64,000 nucleotides of DNA from Lama guanicoe. Lineage: Eukaryota. Where the stretch lies: positions 1,761,408 to 1,825,407 of the forward strand of contig MU054831.1 in the NCBI GenBank assembly GCA_013239625.1, in the 5' to 3' direction. Position numbers and translations under genes: made by a program. A model generated the notes under the pieces. The model saw only the letters and a program-made list of their open reading frames with translations. It did no database searches and was not told the origin of the DNA. Numbering within the stretch: the first letter of the stretch is position 1; each line of letters starts with the position of its first letter. Positions 7,180 to 56,019 of the stretch are shown here, in pieces.

Positions 7180-7949
7180 GCAGATTTGTGCACTTCTTGG
7201 AAGCCAAGTTCCCAACTGCCTGCCAGGTTTTTATTTACAGCTCTTGCTCAATTTGAGCTTGCAAATATTTCCAGAAGACAGTTTTTCTTCTTGGGGGATC
7301 CAGAGCAAATTAGAAACATTCAAAGGATTTTCTAAAGCGCTTTAAGGAGAGTTCTGAAACAGGGAGGGGGGAAGGGGAGCCAACACTGGCTTCATCGCAA
7401 AGTCACAGAGCACAGAAGGGCAGACGGTTTTGCCGCCTGCAGACAGAACCCTGGCCGGGGGGCCAGTGCACAGGGGTTTACGTGCACTGGATTCCACGGC
7501 AATAGCATCACCAGCTTCGGGAAGGCCAGGACAACTGCAGGGAGATGCTGGCTCTGCTTCCGAACCAGAATCCACGTGGCCGGTGGCGTCCTCTGGAACC
7601 GCCTGGATCGGAGGGGTTTCGGAGGGCTGCCCCAGTACAGCCACGCTGGCATTTAGGTCATTTTATTTTCGGGAGAATTGGACTGGGAATGCTTCTGCGT
7701 TGCTGACACAGGGCATCGCTCTGAAGAGAAAGCCCTTGCAGCTGTCCGTTAAGGAAAATTTTGTCTCTTGGAAGTTCGTTCTAACAGCTTCAGTAGTTTC
7801 AGTTCGTCCTTTAATAGGATCTTTGGGAAAAAACGTGCACCAGAAGAGAGAAGCCAGGTGGGCGGGTGGGACAGGCAGCCCTCCACCAAGGAAGAGTTTG
7901 GCTGGAAGTGAGATTTTGGAGTCCCCCGCAGATTTCAGGCAGCCCTTTC

Positions 7950-8420
7950 AGGGTCAGCGTGCGTGGAAATAGCTGTTGTGAGGCTTCCCGGACGCCGCGC
8001 TCGGCACGCGCCGCGGCGCAGCTGGGCGGGGGCCAGGGCGGCGGCGGGGACCGCTCCGGGCTGCCGCGCCGCTTCCCGGAATCGCTGCTTAGTTTCTCAC
8101 TTCCTAATGTCACTGAAAGAAATCTGCTTTTCTAAACAATGACCCATTCTTTTCCATCTCTTATCAGTTTAAAGTTGAGACATTTTGCTCTCAAATAACA
8201 ACAAGGATGTTAAGACGTGAAACAGTGTTGCCAGTCATTCAAGCCGGACCCACGGGGTCGCGAGGCTGCTCGCTGACGCTGTGTCGTTTACGACGAAACG
8301 GTTGTTCCGGTTTGTTTTTACCGCGCAGGCTGGTTCCTGAAAGCCGCCTTCAACTGTCACCCCCGCGATTTTGCCCTCCCCCCAGCGGGCACCGCAGGCC
8401 CTGTCCACGTTGCGGGCTTT
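7950..8420. promoter_or_regulatory. Intronic CpG-rich element with GC box, STAT (TTCCCGGAA 8073-8081) and ETS-like motifs
   Basis: Local CpG cluster (ggacgccgcgctcggcacgcgccgcggcgc…gggcggggg) in non-repeat sequence. Confidence 0.45.
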
Positions 8421-8449
8421 ATCAGCCCTGCTGGTTTTCTATTTCCTGA

Positions 8450-9800
8450 ACAGCAAGTCCTTCAGTTTCTTTCCCCTTCACTATCCTCTTCCTCTTTCCT
8501 CTTGAGCAGTGTATGATTTAACTGAGTTCTTTTTCTGACTCTTTGGGTCCAATGCTCAGTTTATTTGTTTCGGTTCCTTTTTTAATTACTTCAGTGCGTA
8601 AGACTATGAATTACACTCTGAGCTCAACTTCACCAGTTCCTGAAATTTTCGGTGTGTGAGGTGTTCCTTCTCTTTATAAATTCTCTCCATTTTCATTTTG
8701 GATTTGGAGTATTTAAGAGAAGAGTGTTCAGTTTTCCTATGGTTGGATTTTTGCTTTTCTTCTTGTTTTATTAATTTCCAATTCTGTCGCAGGGGTTACG
8801 GCCCACGTGTTGTGTGTGTGTGTGTACCAGGACGTTTTCTGTGCCAGTGTGGCATTGACGTTCTGTCAGTGTTTTGTGGAGGTTTGAAAAGGAAGGCACC
8901 AATTCTTTGGCTGTGCAGAGTTTGCAGCACAGCTCAGCTGAAGTGTTGGTCGTATTGTTCAGACCCTGCACGAGCGTGTGTCACAAGCGTGCCACGGCAA
9001 GTTCATACCCACCGCCAGCTCCGCCTCTCTGGTCGGTTCTTCTTCTGCATTCTCTGTGTTCTGTCTTTTGCCAAAAGGTGCACATCTCCAGGACACACTT
9101 GTCTCGTGGTAAATTGTGAACCTGATGCACACGTGAAATGGGCCTTATCAGTGTCTGGCATTTGTTTAGGTTTAATCTCTGTGATGCTGATCTTCTGACC
9201 TCAGATTTCTTCCAGTTGCTATTAGCCCGTTGTGTTCTGGGCGTTGTCTATGTGGACGACACATTGTTTAGTTTTTTTTTTTTTTCACTGAATCTGACCA
9301 TTTTTGTGCGAGTAGATGCCGTTTGCATTCAGCGACACAACGGATCTACTTATTTCTACGCTTTTCATCCAGTTTTCATGTCCTGGCTTCTATGCTGAAA
9401 GCTTCTGGCTTTGCTTCTCATTCGTGGGTTTTCTGGCCTTTTCTTTGGGTCCGTGTGAGAAGGTGTGTTGTCCTGGTCACTCGGAAGGCTGTGTCCTCTC
9501 TCCAGACCTCATCACAAGACAACTTAAAAGCGCGTGTACTTAGCTAAACGACTGCTTCTTGCTCTGGCGGCTGTAGGCAGCGTTTGTGGACACCCCACGA
9601 GAGACTGGATTGCTGCCAGCGCACTGTCACTTCTCCGGCCTCTTTTCTCGTTTTCACTTTCTGAGTTTGTCAGTCACAGTGTTGTTTTTAGTTCTGGGGG
9701 TTCTCTTTATAGCATGTAAATCGTATACTTACCATCCTCCATTTACTGACTTATTAACCTTAAAATGCTGCTGGTGTATCACTAGGAAAAGCAAGAAAAT
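8450..9800 (-). mobile_element. Highly decayed L1 fragments
   Basis: T-rich, low-CpG stretch with antisense-L1-like wording. Family uncertain. Confidence 0.35.
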
Positions 9801-26432: not shown

Positions 26433-27065
<633 letters not shown>

Positions 27066-27139
27066 TAAAAGTCACGGTGTAGAAAAGCACTGAAAGTAGC
27101 ATTTCATCCACAAATATAAGATTTGTCCATAAATGGAAA

Positions 27140-27290
27140 CATTACCAGCAAGAAGAAACACCAGAATATTAACGGTGATCATCTCTGGGTGGTGTGTTTA
27201 CGCATCATCTTCACTGTCTTCTTAGGACTTGTCTGTCTTCTCTCCATTTTTCCTACTGACCTTTCATAGTCAGAGAAAGACAGTAATATT
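27140..27290 (+). mobile_element. L1ME-type 3' end fragment
   Basis: caccagaatattaacggtgatcatctctgggtggtg…tttcatagtcagagaaa. Confidence 0.6.
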
Positions 27291-27493
27291 TTCTTTTAAT
27301 TTAAATGGAATAAGAAAAAACTAACGTAGATCTTTTGGGGGACACTCACTCTCTGCATGTATATAATCTGATCCCAGATTTTAAAAGAAACACATACTGG
27401 GGATGCATAGCAAAGTCATGTTATGCAGTTGAGGGACCACTTGTGATGTCTGTGATCACAGCATGCTCTCACTGTATTTAGGACCGTGCAGAG

Positions 27494-28272
27494 CAATGAT
27501 GTCCAATGGAAATAAGCAGGTATATATTACAGTTACATAGGTGATTTTACATCTTCTGTAGCCACCTTAAGACACCAGAAGAAACTGGCTGTGTAAGTTA
27601 CGTTATCGCTAGGTAACAAATTACCTGAAAACCTAGCTACTGAAAAAAACGCGCATGTGCTGTCTGGTTGCATCCCGGGGTCGGGTCCGGGAGCTGCCTT
27701 CCTGGTGGTTATGTCTCAGGATCTCTCAGGAGGTGCAGTCAAGCTGCCGGTGAGGGCTGCGGTCTCATCTGAAGGGTGCTGGGGCTGCAGGGTCACTCCC
27801 AAGCTCACCTGCGTGGGCATAGGGAGGAGGCCATGGGTCCTTACCACCTGAGCCTCCAACAGCAGCTTCCCCAAAGTGAACATCCCAGATGCCAAGATCC
27901 AAGGGGCCAAGAAGGAGGCCTCCGTGTCTTCTTGCCTAATCTGAGAAGTGACACCCCCTCCTGCCTTATTCTACTGTTTCATAGATCAGCCCTCCCAGAG
28001 GGGCCCAGGCAAGAGGTGACCAGGGGGCAGGGATCTTTGGGGGCTGCTGGGAGCCTGGCTGCCAAAGTTAAATTAATGTGAAGACATTTTACTTAAACTC
28101 CTACTTCTAAAATTGTTTTCACTCAAAATGCATAGAAACACTTGTGTTTGTCGTCAACCTTGGTGCACCATTGCAGATGAGACATGGAGAGCACATCTCC
28201 GCCTGGCCCCACAGCGTTTCAGGTGCCCTGTGACCACATGTGGTACGAGGCCATTTAGGGGTTGGGCAGCAG
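27494..28272 (+). mobile_element. MER33-like hAT DNA transposon, split by an MLT1 LTR
   Basis: 5' end caatgatgtccaatggaaat…tagccacc…agaaactgg. It resumes at aaattaatgtgaagacattttacttaa, and the 3' end is agcacatctc…tttcaggtgc…ccacatgtgg…ttgggcagca. Confidence 0.7.
27590..28066. mobile_element. MLT1 (ERVL-MaLR) solo LTR
   Basis: tgtgtaagtt…gtaacaaattacc…gcagtcaagctg…gggctgcggtctcatctgaagg…gaagtgacac…ggggcagggatctttggggg…ggctgcca. Confidence 0.8.
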
Positions 28273-29073
28273 GGATGTGGAGAATTGAAAGCCATGCCCT
28301 CGTGTTCCCCAGTGCTTCTGCGATGCTGTTTCCATGGAGACCATCATGGCCCATGGGTGGACGTCACTCAGCCAGGCCTTGGCTTCTTCAGGTGTCAGCC
28401 ACACCCAGACTGCCTGTGCCCCCTGGTGCCAGGGGGGAGCTGCCCCGAGGCCCTGGGTCTTGGCCGGTTTGATTGTTCCTCTGGGTTTTGTTGGTGTCCA
28501 GTTGTTGCCTTTGCTGCTTCCCCTCGACTCCATTGGGGTTCTGAGGTCGATGTTGGACAAACCAAGGAGAGAACACTTTCCAGAGCGGCTGGAAGTCCAG
28601 CCCCCATCGTTTTGCCTTAAGAATCCTGAGCAGGCGAGTGCTCCTGCCTATCAGAGGTCACCAGTCTCCATGGAGTGCACGGGGTGGGGGGAGGTGAGTC
28701 TCCCTCCATGGAGACTGGTCCCCAGCAGCCACGTGGTCCTCTACTTTTCAAATAAGCACTGTCGGGTTTGGGGTGGAGCGGTTGAGGGCCCTTCGTGGCT
28801 GTTGGGACTAGAGGGAGGCCCTGCGGGGACGCTGGTGTGCCCTGGACCTCGCCCGCCGGTGGGGAGGCCTGCACCTTGCTAATGGTTGCTGCTCCGTGCG
28901 GTGCAGGGGGGGATGCAGGGGGGACCACGGTCCAGGCCAGCCCCACCCGAGGCGTGTTTGGCAGCACCCACTTTTCAGGACGGTGGTGGGGAAGCCCCAG
29001 GCGGCCCGGGCCATGGTCCTGGCAGCGGGAGTCAACCCAGGTATCTGCCTTTCAGCACCGGCGAGAGCCCCCG

Positions 29074-29223
29074 CAGGCTGCCGCCCCTCGCCTCCCCCGC
29101 AGGCTGCTGCCTCCCCAGGCTCCGCCTCCCCAGGCTGCTACCGCCCCTTCAGGCTCCGCCCCCACCGGCTCCGCCCCCACAGGCTGCTACTGCCCGCGCA
29201 GGCTCCGCCCGCGCAGGCTGCGG
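29074..29223. repeat. GC-rich minisatellite of 9 units (CAGGCT-anchored, mostly 15-19 bp), several with Sp/KLF GC boxes
   Basis: Units start at 29074, 29100, 29116, 29131, 29150, 29165, 29180, 29199 and 29214; core caggctccgcc or caggctgctac. Confidence 0.85.
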
Positions 29224-29770
29224 TCTCATTTTGTCCTGGAGGTTGCAGCCTCTCATTTCTGTGCCTCTCAAACAACGATTTAAAAAACGAGCCCTGGGCT
29301 CCCTCACGTCCGGTGACCTTGCCGGCCCACGTGGGGCAGAGCTACTTCTCAGCATGTTTTTGAAGATCTTCCGTCACAGGCCTGTGTCTTTATGTCCTCT
29401 CAGAAGCCGGAGTGATGGCTGCGGGCTGGCTCTTCCCGGTCCTCTCGGATGGGTCCCCTTTTCCTGGCCCCATGGCGACCGGCGGGGCCCGTCTCTGCTC
29501 GTCTCTTCCGAGGAGAGCACCGTGCGTCCCCGAGGTCGCCATCCACCTGCCCCGACCTGAGGGCGCGCTTGCCACCCGCTCTGCGTGCGGCCCCCGCCTC
29601 TGCGCGCCGCAGCCCAGCGCGGCGCCTGGGTGACGAAGGGGCCGGGCCGCGTGCTGGTTTGCACTTTTCCCCGTTTCCACTCCCCGCGCACTTGTCCTCG
29701 GACAGCATGTGACGGCGGGATCGCGGCAAACTTGCTGGGGTGGATTTTTGTGCTCCAGGGATTAAGGAAG

Positions 29771-29797
29771 ATGCTCATTGTTGACATTCTCGTGTAT
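29771..29797 (+). CDS. HDAC4: Candidate coding part of an alternative first exon of HDAC4 (MLIVDILVY), splicing to the exon at 42328
   Basis: aagATG has A at -3. Nine codons are followed by TAT|gtgagt, a phase-0 donor matching the phase-0 acceptor at 42328. It lies inside a CpG-rich region. Inference only. Confidence 0.5.
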
Positions 29798-32079
29798 GTG
29801 AGTTGAACCTGCAGGTTTTACAAGGGAAAAAAGGAGAAATAAACAGACCCCAGGTACGTGAGGGGTCAGCAGAGGCAGCGCCAGGAAGCAGCAAACATCC
29901 AAACGCTCTGGTGCTGCCGCCGCCGCTGGGTGAGACCCGGCTTCCCGCGGTCCGGCCTCTGCCGGCTGCGCCCGGCCTCCGCGGCCGTTTCCCGCCTCAG
30001 CTGGTGCTTCACGAGTTGTGCCGCCTCTTCGGAGATGGAGGAGAGCGCCCCCAACCCGAGCCCTCCCGACAGCGCCTGGTGCCTCGCAGCCCGGCGGGTG
30101 GGGCTCCTCACGTCGGGCGTGCCCCCCCACTCGCGGGCCGGACGCCCCAGGAGGGGACGGGAGCCCCGGAACCTGGCTCTGGGCTGGTTCTCAGCAGCGA
30201 AGGGAGCGCCTCCAGGTTCCGTGTTCTCCGCAGTTGAATCATTTGTTTTTCCATTTGCGATGGAGATCTGCAGTCTGAAGCTGTTTAAACTGTGTGATCC
30301 GGCGTTCCCTCCGCCCGCGCCGCTGTGACGATTTAGGCCCTCCTCGTAGGCCGTGGTGCTGATAGTGACAGTTGGCAGTGGTGGTTGTCAGACAGATTTC
30401 TTGAGCGCACTATCTAATTAGTGTCATTAAATCATCAGTGGATTTGAATAGGATTTTATAATTAAAAAGGGAATCGTTTTTGAAATGGAACTTCAGTTGT
30501 TAACCTTGGGTGCAGAAGGTCTCTCGGGAGGTTTCCACACTCAGTGTCACGCTTGTACAAGACAGTTTCCTTGTTGGTCGTGACTCAGGGGCCCCGTCCC
30601 CGCTCCGTCCCGCACTGTGGGTTCTCTTCTCCCCGGAGCGGGGTCCAGGGAGCCTGGTTACCGAGGCCGAGGGCTGAGAGCGTCGTGCCACTGGGTGTCG
30701 GCAGGTGCTTGTGTCCAGAAAATTGTTGGCCGCTTCATCACCTGGGAGAGCGTAGCTGCTCATCTGGCAAATGTAACATTACCGAGATTTGCTGCTTTGG
30801 GCGTTTGTTGTGCTATATTTAACTTTTAAAAACTTTTATCAGAGAAATTTGTGTTTCTAATGTATCTAGTCGAAAGGTAGTGTGTCAACACAGAGAACCT
30901 GCCCTCGCCGCCCGCCCCCCACCCAGCTTCCCAGGCCCCAGGTCTGTGCTGGTACGCGCGCCCTGTGTCTCCACGGCCAGCTTGGTGCCTGAGTCCTGGG
31001 TCCCTTGTGGTGGGTTCCCACTTGCGGGAAAGACTTGGCTTTCTCACCTCCCCCCACCCCGTGCACCCGCCGCATCTTCGTGGTGCCCCCACACTGAGCC
31101 GCCTCCTAGTTAAAGAGCCCTTCAGGGGCTCCACCCTCATGGGGGGGGCCTGTTGCTTATGCCACACAGTGACCGCGTGGCCTTCCTGATACAGCTGTCG
31201 GCTTTCCCTGAGTCTGTCGTCTCCTCCCTCACCATTGGCTTAGTTCCCTGTGCCTGATGCAAACCCGGCCCCACAGTCTGAGAAACCTGTCAGCCCTTCT
31301 TGCTGTGGGGAGCGCCCCCGTGCAAGCCAGGACTCCTCGGCCACCTTGTTCTGGGTTCCAGCCTGCCATCCCTTCCCTTCCACCCACGGCAGTGATGTTC
31401 TTGTAAACATGTGGCTTTTGCTGCTTTGCAAGCGCTTGTAATATTGTATTGGGAATGAATTAGACATTCCCTTCAGTGATGGGAAGTGCTGTGAACACTG
31501 AGCAGACATGGGATGTCGACCCTGGTGTCTGGGAGCCACCTCCAGGGCTTCCAGGTGGCAGCCGCAGGCTTCTTTGTTCGGGGCGATTCCTTCGCCCTTT
31601 GCTCTGCGTCGTCCCGAGTGCTGAGGACACACCTGCTCTCCAGCCCTGCCTGCAGGCTTTGTTCTTGTGAATTTATGTCTCCTAAAAAGTAGTGTCCCTC
31701 TCAGTGGGTTTTGGAGAGGAGCAGGGGTGAAAGCGTGTTCACTCGGCCCTGCTCACCCCGACGTCTGGCCTCCTCTTCAGCCGCTGGCTGACAGCATCCT
31801 CAGATCTTCCCCAGGGCCCCCTGCACCCCCGGAGGACACCTGTCTAGGTGAATGGCCCAAGCATCACGGGACGAGGGGGACGAGGCCCGGGGCTGAGGGT
31901 GCCCGGCGCCTGCCCAGCGGGGAGGGAGCAGCAGCCTTTACCTCCAGACCGTCTTTTTCACGGGGACCGCTTTCCTCCTGATCTCTTTCTGATCGCAAAG
32001 TCCTTAATGTTAATTATTGAGTAACTGGAAATTACAAGGGAAATGTGACTCCAGTCCTGTTAGCTAGGGAGGCTGTTAC

Positions 32080-32900
32080 ATTTGGAGTATATTCTTGTAA
32101 TCTTAAATTATGTACGTTGTGTGTGTGTCGATAGTTGTATGGAATTGGGGTTATACTGACACGAGGCTTTTATTTAGCGTATTGTTAATATTTCCCTTTA
32201 CCATCACATACACTTCAGAAGTGTGGTTTTAATGGTTTCGTGGTCTTACAGTGAGCCATGATGAATTTAAATAACCACTGATGGTTAAGTGGTTGGACAT
32301 CAAGGTCATTTGCAGGTTTCCTTCTGTTTTGAGCATCCTTGTGTGTGGACCATATGCGTTTGTCTTAACAAAATAGAAGTGGTGTTGCAGACCCCAGATG
32401 AGTCCTTCTCCGAGGCCTTTGTTACCTGTCGTCGTGTTTCTCTCCAAAAGCTACACCAGTCCTGAGTGTGCACCTGTCTGTCTCTCTCACGTGCACACAC
32501 ACACGCACGGGCCGAGAGCAGTAACGGTGGCACTTACTGACCCGTGCCGGGGCTGCCCGGGCCCCCTCATCCCGCCCACAGTCTGGCCCGGGCCGGGGCG
32601 ACCCCGGCCTCGCCCCTGCGCTGCGCGCAGACCGCCGAGTGGCTGAGCAGGTACGAACAAGTCAGACTTGTTCACATTGCGTTCGATTCTGTCCCACATG
32701 GTGTCCGCATGTCCTTGAGTGTGGTCGCCCAGATTTCTACGTGCTGATTGCCTTTTTGCATTTTTCTACTAATTACCATTTCCTGTGCTGTTTTCCTGTT
32801 GCAGTGCTGGCCTCTTTCTCATTGGTACATGAATGTTCTTCATAAATTAAGGGCATTATTTCAGCGTCCATCATATCTTGCCATTTGGCTATTAGTTGTG
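32080..32900 (-). mobile_element. L1ME-type fragments
   Basis: ggttggacatcaaggtcatttgcaggtttcc…gagcatccttgtgtg; ttctcattggtacatgaatgttcttcataaattaagggcatt. Confidence 0.55.
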
Positions 32901-40935: not shown

Positions 40936-42021
40936 CATGTGACGTCAGTCGTACGTAGAGTCTGAAAAAAAAGAAAAAGACACGAATGGCGTTATTCACA
41001 CACTGAAATCCTGTTCCCTTACTTTCCGTGCTGCTCTAGCTGTTGGCAGAACCTGGGCAACTTCCAGACTGTGGAGATGGCGGAAGGCGGTCAGGGGAGG
41101 GGGGCCAGGCAGCCAGGGGTGGCCTGTGGGAGGGGCTGCTCTCTCCTCTCCCTGCGGTCCCTTGGCTGGGGAGAGGCTCTGCCCGGGCCTCGCCTGCAGC
41201 CCTGACCCTCCCCGGCAGTGAGGTGGCTCCAGGCAGTGACCTCGGAGCTGGAGGCGGGCACAGCAGGAGCCTGATGCCGGCCCGGCTCTGCTTCCAGGGA
41301 CGAGAGTTTGGAGATGTTCCTGGATACACACTGCCCGCTCCCAGGCTGCCAGCACACGCGTGCATACGCATGCATGCACACACGCTCACATAGATGGCTC
41401 GTGTGTCTCCGTGTAGACTGTTTTCTTGGGTGCAGGGGACCGCTCAGGGGAAAGCTGGGCAGCCTCCGCCTCCTGCCCCTTGGGGCACCCTGGGCAGCGG
41501 TGTGCCCTGTGCCCCTCATCCTTCACCCCTGAGCACCTTCATCTTCTCTCAGGGCACAACGCTGTCCTCATAGAACAGCTGGAGAAGAGGAGGGGAGGCC
41601 GTGAGAGGCACCTGCAGCGTCCTGGGTGGGGAGCCCTTCAGGCCGAGGCCCTGACCCACCGGCCACTCGGCGCCTGGGTCTCCCCTTCAGAGTGTCGCGC
41701 TTTACGCTTCGTGCTCCAGGACTTCGTGTCAGCGGGCTCCTCGGGATCTGACCTGTCTGCCCCCCCCCGTCAGCACGGGGCTTTTTTGCTTGTTTTGTGC
41801 CTGTCATGTGTTTCCGGGCACCTGCGGTTTCTTCTTTTTCTTGGCGAGGTGGGTCTCTAGCGTCCAGACACGCACTTCTGCTGCGGTGCTGACGTCCGGG
41901 GGCGTCTGAGGTGCGTCAGGCGGGGCTGTCGCGAGCACAGTGCCCGGCACAGGCCCACGCAGGGCTTTGCACGGGTCAGTCCTGGGAGTGGGGTTGGTGG
42001 GTCCTGGTGGGCGAGGGCTAA

Positions 42022-42657
<636 letters not shown>

Positions 42658-44290: not shown

Positions 44291-47200
44291 CGGGGTCTTC
44301 CTCCCCTCTACCCTCTACCCTCTGCCCTCTGCCCGGTCCCTCTCCTAAGAGTGCCTTGGGAACAGCAGAGACTCAGTCCTAATGCCGCCCTATTTGTCAG
44401 TCTTTCTGCTCAGTCAGGGTAGAATGTAATTGATCTGTATTATGTGTCTATTATTTTGTTCATTTTATAAATGCTTCCTTTGAAAGAGGATATTATTTTT
44501 CCTAAAAGTACGTAGCTAATTTATCCTCATTTTCAGTTTATCTATTTATTTGTACATCCTTAGTAATTGTTTCTAAACGTAAAATTTCATAGCTTTATTA
44601 GTTACCGCAGCATTTTGCTCTTAAAATAATCAATATACTTTAAACATAGTTTTACTTGGACTAAGAGTTTCAACATAGAAAGCACGTCAGGAGAGGTTCT
44701 GTTCCACAGGAGACCTAACTTTGTACCAATAGTTGAAAGTTGTCACTAAATCTGAACCGTGTACGTGGTCACATCACGACAGTTAGACGAAAGACGGCTC
44801 GCAGGCTCGCTGATCACCCACCGTCGAGATTCCAGGATGAGGACGGAGGCCGTCAGGGGAAGCAGAACGGCAGGTCTGGGCTGCCCACTGCAGAGCCCTC
44901 CCCGGGCGCCGGGGAGGACCGGATGCCGCTGCCCGCGGGGTGGGCTGACTGCTAAAATGGAAGGCGGCACCGGCTGCCCCGTGGGCCCTTGAGTGCCGAT
45001 GGGGTGGGCTGGTGGGGTAGACGGTGCCCGTCGCACTCACCACTCTCACCGCCCAGCCGGCCAGCTACGGTCACACCCCTCCGCACCCCGCCAGGCTGGT
45101 CCTCTCCACCACGTGTTCTGCTCCGAGGGTGTGGCCGGGGAGCGGATACGTCCAGGCCTGCAGCAGGTGGTGTCAGGAGCCCCCAGCCGTCCTGACGCCC
45201 TGATCTGGCGTGGAGGGTGGGCGCCCTCGTTTTCATTTCTAAAACTCCAGGGACGACACTGAGTGCAGGAGAACCGGGTCTAGGTGGGCGCCCTTGCCCC
45301 GGGTCAGGAGGCTGAGCGTCCCAGCAGCTCCGTGGCCTCCCTCCTGTGTCCCCCACGTGGGTGCCACCTTCCGTTTTATCAGTCACCCACGGCAGCAGCA
45401 TCCGGTCTCCACAGGCGCCCTGGGAGGGGCTCTGCTGCGGGCAGGACGGCAGGGGAGTGGGGAGCAGAGCCCAGGTGCGCCTGCTGCGCTGCACCCGCCT
45501 GGCCTGCGACGCGGGCCCTGCCCCCGTCCGCCCTCTCTCCCTGGCCTGGACCTCTGTGTGTCCTACTCTTGTTTCTCTTTGGAGCGGGGAAATGGTTGTT
45601 CATCAGAGGGTGGAGGTCTAGCTGGTGGGGGCCGGCGGGCTGATGGGCGCCCCACTCACCAGCTGCTCGGTACAGCAGGTCTAAAGGAGTTCCTCCAAGT
45701 TTCCCAGAAACTTCCAGTGAAAACGTCTCCAGCCTCACGAGGTTTGGAACGACTTGGCTTCAGCAAGCGCAGCAGGCCTGTTTAAGGTCGGAAGCACTTC
45801 TGGCCCCGCCTGCCGAGCAGCCCCTTAGCTGAGACATCAGAATGTCCCTGCCTCCCTCCCGGCTGGTCGCAGCGCTGCCCCGGTGGCCGCAGTCCGTGCG
45901 TTTGGGCGGCCTGGCTTCGGTGTTAACAACAAGCTGTGCTCGGTCGGGCGTTCGGCCTCAGGGCGCGCGGTCTTGCGAACAGGCGCTGGGCGGTGGGCGC
46001 GCCTTGTCCGGGGCTCTGCGTGCGCGGGGCTGGCCGGGGTCCTCCCGCAGGAGGTGCAGCGTAGGGGGCGTTGCGGGCGACACACATGGCATTGAGCATC
46101 TCCAGCTTTTAAGCATCTAAAGGTGCAGGGCAAGGCTTCTGTTTTTCAGTTCCTTGGTTTTTTTCTTTTAACGAATTTCTTCTCGAATATTTAATTAAAG
46201 TTTCGTTACACTTATCAACGTTTCCTGTGCCTTTTAAATAATTTTAGTATTTTAAATAATTTAAGCATTGTGAATAGTTTTGTCCGTTACTTGTGATGCC
46301 GGTTACTGCTGTTGGTTTGATGGAAGAGCGACTCTTGGACGTCGTGCTCTCACCTTGTTCAGCAAGAACGACCAGTTACGTTCGATTTCGACGAGCTGTG
46401 TTTCAGAGCCCAAGCTGTGCTGTCGCAAAGTTTACATCAAAGGGAAAATCTGACGAAAGGCAAGTCCGCCCTCTGAGCGGTTTGGAACTAACACAACTAT
46501 GTATATTTTTTCCCGTTTATATTCATTCACAAGCGCGACGTGGTTGGGAATCAGGGCCCATCTCGTAAGGGAAGTCGTGCACTTTGTTTAAAACGATGGC
46601 TCAAAGGGCCGGAGTTCAAGGATGGAGCGCCTGCTGTGAGAGCGATCCCCTGCCCTGCTGGCGGCGTCCCGTGTGCAGAGGCGACAGCCTGGCAGAAGCA
46701 GGGCTGCGACTGGGACGCAGGGTGTGTCCTCGTCCCTCCCGTGACCTGAAGGCGCTTTGTGTCCTTGACTCACCCCGGACCCCACCGGCTGGCTTCGTGC
46801 AGGTACCTCGTACTTCCTCTGTCAACTCTGTCAAACGAGTGACTGATAATCAACGTGAATTAATTTTTTAAAGTGGAAATTAGAAACATTTGGTGTCCAT
46901 TTCCTGAAGGTGTTTTATTGACTCTGGAGCTTCCATTTCACGAGGGGAGATCTGGTGGGAGATGAGAATACAGCTAGCACCCGAGGACCAGGATCAGCCT
47001 CTTCCCTTTTGAAGTCCCTCCCATTGAGGTCATCTTGTGCGTCCGGAAGTCTGGGTTCGGGGAGCTGGGTTTGTTTCCCTCTGACTCAGGGAGAGCCCAG
47101 TGAGGTGCCCCTCTCACCCTGGACAGCTTAGGCAGGTGCCCCAGAGGGACCTCAGCCCTGCCAGGGACCGGCCAGCATCCCCTCCCGGCCGGCAGCTGCC

Positions 47201-50302: not shown

Positions 50303-50622
<320 letters not shown>

Positions 50623-55599: not shown

Positions 55600-56019
<420 letters not shown>

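What the first reader, a model, noticed from the sequence alone, without database searches (positions are those of the whole stretch)
28950..29860. Internal promoter and alternative first exon predicting a CtBP-less, N-truncated HDAC4 ([18 protein letters not shown]…)
Seen: a CpG-dense region starting about 2 kb into intron 4 leads to aagATG (29771), nine open codons and TAT|gtgagt. That phase-0 donor fits the phase-0 acceptor at 42328. Known: exon 4 carries the CtBP-binding PMDLR motif and the first half of the Gln-rich self-association helix. Inference: an internally initiated isoform would keep the MEF2-binding, 14-3-3 and deacetylase regions but lose CtBP recruitment and normal oligomerisation. 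It may already exist as a predicted isoform in annotation databases; I cannot check this.
Basis: partly seen in the sequence, partly recalled or inferred. Interest (0 to 1): 0.75.

Follow-up and report, generated by a model that had tools for sequence, protein, structure and literature searches.

The report
Possible internal HDAC4 promoter and exon
The largest CpG island in this window lies inside an HDAC4 intron and carries a short exon-like piece that is probably transcribed, which would yield a shortened HDAC4 of a kind already predicted in other mammals, but the proposed nine-residue start and its splice could not be checked.

Summary
The sequence features are all present as described: ATG at 29771, nine open codons (MLIVDILVY), TAT|GTGAGT at 29798, and a phase-0 fit to the exon starting at 42328. 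They sit in the middle of the longest and densest CpG island of the window (29014-30397).

The ORF, donor and phase fit is not beyond chance: 3 of 8 GTRAGT donors in this intron have it.

Support:
- RNA-seq contigs from three independent studies hold about 120 nt of 29300-29900.
- Exon-4-less HDAC4 isoforms that start inside exon 5 are annotated in felids, a macaque and lemurs.

Against the exact reading:
- A stronger donor (CAG|GTACGT, 29854) lies 56 nt downstream. Using it would turn the ATG into an 11-codon uORF.
- None of 309 retrieved HDAC4 proteins, and no paper, carries the peptide.
- In-frame and out-of-frame internal-exon readings also exist.

Verdict: a plausible alternative first exon of HDAC4 (about 0.5). 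This is an ordinary kind of feature. The N-terminal peptide is unproven (about 0.2).

The scan noted possible alternative HDAC4 5' exons upstream in this genome, but not this one.

The parts
26632..26876 (+). It ends in phase 0, with donor GTAAGT at 26877.
   Evidence: Read; donor score 5.33.
29014..30397 (.). CpG island, the longest and densest in the window (1384 bp, GC 0.65, o/e 0.79, 115 CpG; strict core 29193-30397).
29094..29219 (.). 15-bp tandem repeat (7.8 copies). Five CCGCCC GC-box cores lie at 29081-29205, four of them inside the repeat.
29540..29720 (+). GC peak (77-83%) and inferred TSS zone. It has no TATA or CCAAT box. It contains TGACG at 29631 and 29710, GCGGCAAA (E2F-like) at 29723, and a minimal uORF ATG-TGA at 29707-29712.
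   Evidence: The TSS position is inference only.
29771..29797 (+). Nine-codon ORF MLIVDILVY. The frame is open upstream to 29561.
29798..29803 (+). Donor 1, TAT|GTGAGT, phase 0 relative to the ATG. PWM score 3.39, 98.2th percentile of all GT in the window.
29854..29859 (+). Donor 2, CAG|GTACGT, PWM score 5.46 (99.7th percentile, as strong as the real exon-4 donor). An exon ending at 29853 contains TGA at 29804, so the ATG 29771 ORF becomes the uORF MLIVDILVYVS*.
29757..29758 (+). Acceptor-like AG after tttttgtgctcc. It would define a 39-nt in-frame internal exon at 29759-29797 (GLRKMLIVDILVY). A second acceptor-like AG at 29704-29705 follows a long pyrimidine tract.
42328..42478 (+). HDAC4 exon 5 (QQQELLAMK...KGKE), with a phase-0 acceptor. 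Its first internal Met is the M of ..LAMKHQQ.
41544..42245 (.). Second CpG-rich stretch, abutting exon 5. It is an alternative place from which exon-5-initiated transcripts could start.

Best explanation
The CpG island at 29014-30397 is an internal, TATA-less, GC-box-type promoter inside the 15.4-kb intron between the CtBP-motif exon and exon 5 of HDAC4. Transcription starting around 29.65-29.72 kb gives a short first exon of roughly 100-150 nt. That exon ends at one of the only two good + strand donors in the island, 29798 or 29854, and is spliced to exon 5 at 42328.

The product is an HDAC4 that lacks the first ~117 residues, meaning the CtBP motif and profile positions 1-52 of the Gln-rich domain. 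It keeps the MEF2-binding stretch, the 14-3-3 sites and the deacetylase domain.
- If donor 29798 is used, translation can start at ATG 29771 and add MLIVDILVY.
- If the stronger donor 29854 is used, that ATG opens an 11-codon uORF and the protein starts at the exon-5 Met (MKHQQ...), as annotated in cats.

Shown: the sequence anatomy, the presence of part of the stretch in RNA, and the domain bookkeeping. Inferred: the strand of the RNA, the TSS, the splice partner and the start codon.
For: - It is the largest CpG island of the window, with the candidate exon in its middle. It has five GC-box cores, no TATA box, and a GC peak just upstream.
- Only two + strand donors score >=3 in 29000-30400. 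Both lie within 60 nt of the ATG. None scores that high on the - strand.
- Seven runs on record as RNA, from three studies, plus seven probable RNA runs from three more studies, each hold 0.09-0.18 of the 55 sampled words of 29300-29900. Eight runs sit at exactly 0.16, the pattern of one discrete unit of about 120 nt.
- No Rfam family lies in 28000-31500 and the sequence is unique in the window, so an abundant small RNA or a repeat is unlikely to explain the RNA.
- Exon-4-less isoforms that start in exon 5 are predicted in Felis catus (XP_019694538.1), Panthera pardus, Leopardus and Herpailurus, and also in Macaca fascicularis (XP_073866766.1), Lemur catta (XP_045414609.1, XP_045414606.1) and Propithecus.
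- Human HDAC4 has four full-length cDNAs with tissue-specific first-exon variants, from testis and immune tissue (PMC2780955).
- Mouse CLL B cells use intragenic Hdac4 TSSs predicted to give truncated protein (PMC9359700).
Against: - No read or contig was laid, so the part of the stretch that is in RNA, its strand and its junctions are unknown.
- The ORF, donor and phase fit occurs at 3 of 8 comparable donors in the intron.
- 15 donors of equal or better score exist in the intron.
- The window is CpG-rich throughout.
- No isoform of about 984 aa, or of about 963 aa, from a close relative of this genome appeared among the 120 best proteins of 316-1006 aa. The only camel entries were the 1004-aa X8 forms, which keep exon 4.
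- The exon-5-initiated isoforms of other species could instead start from a 5'-extended exon 5 (CpG-rich stretch 41544-42245).
- The leader MLIVDILVY is very hydrophobic and is not found in any retrieved protein.
Confidence: 0.5

Rival explanations
1. One reading: the first exon ends at 29797, translation starts at ATG 29771, and the protein begins [18 protein letters not shown]. This is a sub-case of the best explanation, scored separately.
For: The phase-0 fit, A at -3, and an intron side that is a perfect GTGAGT. The donor score of 3.39 exceeds that of the real exon-5 donor, 2.81.
Against: T at -1 and T at -3 on the exon side. A stronger donor lies 56 nt downstream. The peptide is absent from 309 HDAC4 proteins and from the paper library. 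Other species' truncated isoforms start at the exon-5 Met. The fit is within chance.
Confidence: 0.2
2. It is an internal alternative exon rather than a first exon. Either the in-frame 39-nt exon 29759-29797 inserts GLRKMLIVDILVY between exons 4 and 5, or a frame-shifting 'poison' exon runs from 29706 to 29797 or 29853.
For: Acceptor-like AGs with pyrimidine tracts at 29757-58 and 29704-05. The 39-nt version keeps the frame on both sides.
Against: A 39-nt exon holds only nine 31-mers, about one sampled word, so it cannot give the 0.16 share seen. Its position in the centre of the largest CpG island, directly below a GC peak, suits a TSS better. None of the 309 proteins has such an insert.
Confidence: 0.1
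3. The island drives another transcript, either an antisense or bidirectional lncRNA comparable to human HDAC4-AS1 or enhancer RNA. On this reading the + strand ORF and donors are incidental.
For: CpG-island promoters are usually bidirectional (established knowledge). Human HDAC4-AS1 is reported to share a promoter region with HDAC4 in the opposite orientation (PMC8806694). The strand of the RNA pieces is unknown.
Against: No - strand donor scores >=3 anywhere in 29000-30400, while two + strand donors do. The location of human HDAC4-AS1 relative to this intron was not established here.
Confidence: 0.15
4. Nothing functional is here. It is a chance ORF and donor in a CpG-rich intron, and the RNA words come from unspliced pre-mRNA, from DNA carry-over, or from the part of the stretch that a relative's genome happens to share.
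For: The chance rate of the ORF, donor and phase fit. The CpG-rich background with 16 islands in 64 kb. Half of the holding runs are only guessed to be RNA, and all shares are under 0.2.
Against: The same share (0.16) recurs in eight runs from four studies, which does not look like random intronic coverage. This is the top island of the window, with clustered GC boxes.
Confidence: 0.15

Closest known systems
NCBI/Ensembl-predicted N-truncated HDAC4 isoforms that start inside exon 5: Felis catus X7 XP_019694538.1, Panthera pardus X6 XP_053758886.1, Leopardus geoffroyi X6 XP_045338301.1, Herpailurus X5 XP_040306412.1 (963 aa, MKHQQ...); Macaca fascicularis X14 XP_073866766.1 (967 aa), Lemur catta X11/X9 XP_045414609.1/XP_045414606.1, Propithecus A0A2K6G9X0 (972 aa, MLAMKHQQ...)
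   Same: They lack all residues encoded upstream of exon 5, meaning the CtBP motif and the first half of the Gln-rich domain. They keep everything from exon 5 on.
   Different: They begin at the first Met of exon 5 and carry no MLIVDILVY-like leader. They may not use the counterpart of this island.
Human HDAC4 first-exon variants (FLJ51157 testis; FLJ51174, FLJ51177, FLJ59806 immune; PMC2780955) and intragenic Hdac4 TSSs in mouse CLL B cells (PMC9359700)
   Same: Alternative, tissue-restricted transcription starts of HDAC4. The mouse ones are predicted to truncate the protein.
   Different: Neither paper places its start sites relative to this intron, so no correspondence could be tested.
Human HDAC4-AS1 and its shared bidirectional promoter (PMC8806694)
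   Same: An HDAC4-associated promoter region that fires in both orientations.
   Different: Here no - strand donor was found in the island. The homology and position of HDAC4-AS1 were not tested.
Alternative promoters and truncated forms of other class IIa deacetylases (HDAC9/MITR; HDAC7 splice forms, PMC10113009 title only)
   Same: The same gene family uses alternative 5' ends and truncations to change partner binding. This is established knowledge and was not tested here.
   Different: MITR-type forms lose the C-terminal deacetylase domain, whereas this form would lose the N-terminus.

Membership tests
CpG-island alternative promoter with its own first exon | CpG island (>=500 bp, GC>=0.55, o/e>=0.65) at the proposed start | tested here: met
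   29014-30397: 1384 bp, GC 0.65, o/e 0.79, the largest of 16 islands in the window.
CpG-island alternative promoter with its own first exon | Capped 5' ends (TSS) inside the island | not testable with these tools
No CAGE data were available.
CpG-island alternative promoter with its own first exon | The exon is present in RNA | tested here: inconclusive
   0.09-0.18 of the sampled words of 29300-29900 are in RNA-seq contigs of three studies on record as RNA. Which part is held, and on which strand, is unknown.
CpG-island alternative promoter with its own first exon | Splice junction from the exon's donor to exon 5 (42328) | not testable with these tools
The exon-5-only protein searches returned only unspliced genomic ORFs.
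CpG-island alternative promoter with its own first exon | Usable splice donor downstream of the TSS | tested here: met
   29798 scores 3.39 and 29854 scores 5.46. The real donors in the window score 1.9-6.4.
CpG-island alternative promoter with its own first exon | Conservation of the ATG, frame and donor in orthologous introns | not testable with these tools
   No mammalian genome collection was on hand.
Exon-5-initiated N-truncated HDAC4 isoform (as annotated in felids and primates) | The protein lacks the CtBP-motif exon and keeps only the C-terminal part of HDAC4_Gln | tested here: met
   Exon 5 covers profile positions 53-91 of 91 in PF12203. The cat X7 form matches positions 60-91 plus the full PF00850 domain. 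Exon 5 maps to chain positions 73-112 of 2o94/2h8n.
Exon-5-initiated N-truncated HDAC4 isoform (as annotated in felids and primates) | Such an isoform is annotated for this genome or a close relative | tested here: not met
   Among the best 120 proteins of 316-1006 aa, the only camel entries are the 1004-aa X8 forms, which keep exon 4. No protein carries the leader.
In-frame cassette micro-exon | Acceptor and donor, length a multiple of 3, and RNA evidence that fits its size | tested here: not met
   An acceptor-like AG at 29757-58 and a 39-nt in-frame exon exist. However, the RNA share of 0.16 needs about 120 nt, not 39.

The most novel reading that the evidence does not exclude
In this lineage the intron-4 CpG-island exon has acquired an in-frame ATG and uses the 29798 donor. 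A CtBP-less HDAC4 with a private hydrophobic nine-residue N-terminus and a halved oligomerisation helix would then be made, perhaps mainly in reproductive tissue, where most of the holding RNA runs come from. Such a protein could bind MEF2 without normal tetramerisation or CtBP recruitment.
Probability: 0.15. Interest if true: 0.45.

Novelty: new member of a known kind. Interest (0 to 1): 0.3.

Why it matters
HDAC4 represses MEF2 targets partly through its N-terminus, by CtBP recruitment and by Gln-rich helix oligomerisation. An internally initiated form would separate MEF2 binding and signal-dependent shuttling from those two functions, so it could act as a weaker or competing repressor in the tissues that use the promoter.

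The idea itself is not new. Truncated forms that start in exon 5 are already in the annotation of several mammals, and alternative HDAC4 first exons are known in human and mouse. The value here is mainly as an annotation lead for this genome, and as a pointer to one specific island that could be the source of those isoforms.

Tried and rejected
No letters of 26671-26710 were sent to any search tool afterwards. Full-length database proteins whose own sequences cover the homologous residues were passed by id in two calls. In one search the search region was set to 114-613. In one search it was an exact look-up for accessions.
Only exon 5 alone and the unspliced 29585-29803 ORF were used.
3. Exon-5-only searches returned unspliced genomic read-through ORFs, which are uninformative.
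4. The primate HDAC4 search found that all 120 best hits keep exon 4.
5. The peptide search in papers gave 0 hits. Four other paper searches found no study of an intron-4 promoter.
6. Rfam found nothing in 28000-31500.
7. The metagenome scan with a codon-degenerate pattern gave 0 hits. It is uninformative because mammalian DNA is scarce in that collection.
9. The unspliced 73-aa ORF is not in the protein collection and has no Pfam family.
I stopped that step, so the species is not established. By eye, the exon-4 translation equals the Camelus X8 proteins.
11. Human proteins appeared in the hit lists. No human contig was fetched, saved or compared.
Full report
**What is there**

HDAC4 runs on the + strand of the window.
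- The exon that encodes the CtBP motif and the first part of the Gln-rich domain is 26632-26876. It ends in phase 0 and has its donor GTAAGT at 26877.
- The next coding exon starts at 42328 in phase 0 (QQQELLAMK...) and ends at 42478.
- Exons 6 and 7 lie near 50503-50621 and 55708-55828.
- The intron between the first two exons is 15.4 kb.
The phase fits the acceptor at 42328.

**Is it more than chance?**

The coding-type argument alone is not. Of the eight GTRAGT donors in this intron, three are preceded by an in-frame ATG with no stop and sit in phase 0. Fifteen donors in the intron score as well as 29798 or better on a simple position-weight matrix.

What stands out is the setting.
- The exon lies in the middle of a CpG island at 29014-30397 (1384 bp, GC 0.65, o/e 0.79, 115 CpG). 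This is the longest and densest of 16 islands in a window that is CpG-rich throughout (median o/e 0.52).
- The island has a 15-bp tandem repeat at 29094-29219, and five CCGCCC GC-box cores lie at 29081-29205 (four inside the repeat). It has no TATA or CCAAT box.
- It carries TGACG half-sites at 29631 and 29710 and an E2F-like GCGGCAAA at 29723.
- A GC peak of 77-83% at 29540-29660 lies directly upstream of a 40-48% GC patch at 29720-29870, which holds the ORF.
- Within 29000-30400 only two + strand GT sites score 3 or more, and both are next to the ORF. They are 29798 (3.39, 98.2th percentile of all GT in the window) and 29854, CAG|GTACGT (5.46, 99.7th percentile). The real exon-4 donor scores 5.33. 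No - strand site reaches 3.

**RNA evidence**

- A search of public runs with 29300-29900 (55 sampled words) found DNA-type runs of one organism label holding 0.74-0.89 of the words.
- Seven runs on record as RNA, from three studies, hold 0.09-0.18. They are transcriptomes and metatranscriptomes labelled reproductive system, plus a second organism label.
- Seven more probable RNA runs, from three further studies, hold similar shares.
- Eight runs sit at exactly 0.16.
- Nine of 55 words correspond to roughly 120 contiguous bases (my inference). The repeated identical share suggests one discrete unit such as an exon rather than scattered intronic coverage.
- It is too much for a 39-nt micro-exon.
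- There is no Rfam family in 28000-31500 and the sequence is unique in the window. An abundant small RNA or a repeat is therefore unlikely to be the source.

The strand, the ends and the junctions of the RNA therefore remain unknown.

**Annotation and relatives**

- Exon 5 alone, searched in two protein collections, gave only unspliced genomic read-through ORFs.
- An Aotus HDAC4 from those results (P0027) was used with its region 114-613. It returned 120 primate proteins, and every one keeps the exon-4 residues.
- I then typed residues 114-688 of that protein, so that only proteins of 316-1006 aa were candidates. This exposed annotated N-truncated isoforms that start inside exon 5.
  - MKHQQ... 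(963 aa) in Felis catus X7, Panthera pardus X6, Leopardus geoffroyi X6 and Herpailurus X5.
  - MLAMKHQQ... (967-973 aa) in Macaca fascicularis X14, Lemur catta X9 and X11, and Propithecus (accessions).
- Exon-4-less HDAC4 is therefore already a predicted isoform class.
- None of the 309 proteins retrieved has IVDIL, LIVD, VDILV or DILVY in its first 200 residues, and no paper in the library holds the peptide.
- The only camel proteins in that list, the 1004-aa X8 forms, keep exon 4. By eye, their exon-4 region equals the window's.
- Those isoforms need not use the counterpart of this island. A second CpG-rich stretch (41544-42245) abuts exon 5, and a 5'-extended exon 5 would give the same proteins.

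**What the product would be**

- Exon 5 covers positions 53-91 of the 91-position HDAC4_Gln profile. It maps to the last 40 residues of the crystallised Gln-rich helix (2o94, 2h8n) and to positions 55-104 of the 7xuz chain.
- Exon 6 carries the [13 protein letters not shown] stretch known as the MEF2-binding motif. Exon 7 ends in the FPLRKT context of the first 14-3-3 site (the functional assignments are established knowledge).
The isoform would lose the CtBP motif and more than half of the oligomerisation helix and keep the rest.

**Which start codon?**

- With donor 29798 the ATG at 29771 is in frame (A at -3). It is preceded only by a minimal ATG-TGA uORF at 29707, if the TSS lies that far upstream.
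- With the stronger donor 29854 the same ATG runs into TGA 29804 (MLIVDILVYVS*). The protein would then start at the exon-5 Met, which is exactly what is annotated in cats.
- There are also acceptor-like AGs at 29757-58 and at 29704-05. The first gives an in-frame 39-nt exon, GLRKMLIVDILVY. Internal-exon readings therefore exist, although the RNA word count and the island context speak against the 39-nt one.

**Literature**

- Human HDAC4 has four full-length cDNAs with tissue-specific first-exon variants, from testis and immune tissue (PMC2780955).
- Mouse CLL B cells use intragenic Hdac4 TSSs predicted to truncate the protein (PMC9359700).
- Human HDAC4-AS1 is described as sharing a promoter region with HDAC4 in the opposite orientation (PMC8806694).
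- None of these papers places its sites relative to this intron, and I found no study of an intron-4 promoter.

**Verdict**

| Reading | Probability |
|---|---|
| Internal CpG-island promoter with a short first exon spliced to exon 5, either donor (includes the next row) | about 0.5 |
| The specific MLIVDILVY start (sub-case of the row above) | about 0.2 |
| Internal exon | about 0.1 |
| Antisense or other transcript | about 0.15 |
| No function | about 0.15 |

It is a new member of a known kind, of modest interest. One laying of the already identified RNA runs on 27000-32900 would settle it.

**Procedural notes**

- A metagenome scan for the exon found nothing and is uninformative.
- Human proteins appeared in hit lists, but no human contig was fetched or compared.

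Noticed in passing
window 1-64000: The whole window is unusually CpG-rich for mammalian DNA (median o/e 0.52 in 500-bp windows). 16 stretches of >=500 bp pass GC>=0.55 and o/e>=0.65. CpG density alone is therefore a weak promoter signal in this locus.
   Followed up: partly
window 41544-42245 and 42022-42327: A CpG-rich stretch abuts exon 5. The exon-5 frame is open upstream to 42022, with an in-frame ATG near 42206. A 5'-extended exon 5 could be a second route to exon-4-less HDAC4 transcripts.
   Followed up: no
window 29094-29219: A 15-bp tandem repeat (7.8 copies, consensus CCCCCACAGGCTCCG). Four of the five CCGCCC GC-box cores found at 29081-29205 lie inside it, one core every 15-34 bp. 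It looks like an Sp1-site array made by repeat expansion.
   Followed up: partly
window 29720-29870: A 40-48% GC patch of about 150 bp in the middle of a 65-83% GC island. It holds the ORF, both donors and an A-rich run (gggaaaaaaggagaaataaac). Its origin was not determined.
   Followed up: no
window 7804-8521 and 45690-46195: Two further compact CpG islands with o/e 0.88. One lies upstream of the CtBP-motif exon and one lies in the intron after exon 5. They were not examined for exons.
   Followed up: no
proteins P0030 and P0281 (Trichosurus vulpecula, 'HDAC4-like' X2 and X1, 585 and 612 aa): C-terminally cut HDAC4-like forms without the deacetylase domain, ending in a private tail. These are MITR-like truncations annotated in a marsupial.
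   Followed up: no
runs X1, X3-X6: Most of the runs on record as RNA that hold part of the stretch are labelled reproductive system metagenome. One of the four human HDAC4 first-exon-variant cDNAs is testis-specific (PMC2780955). This may be coincidence.
   Followed up: no
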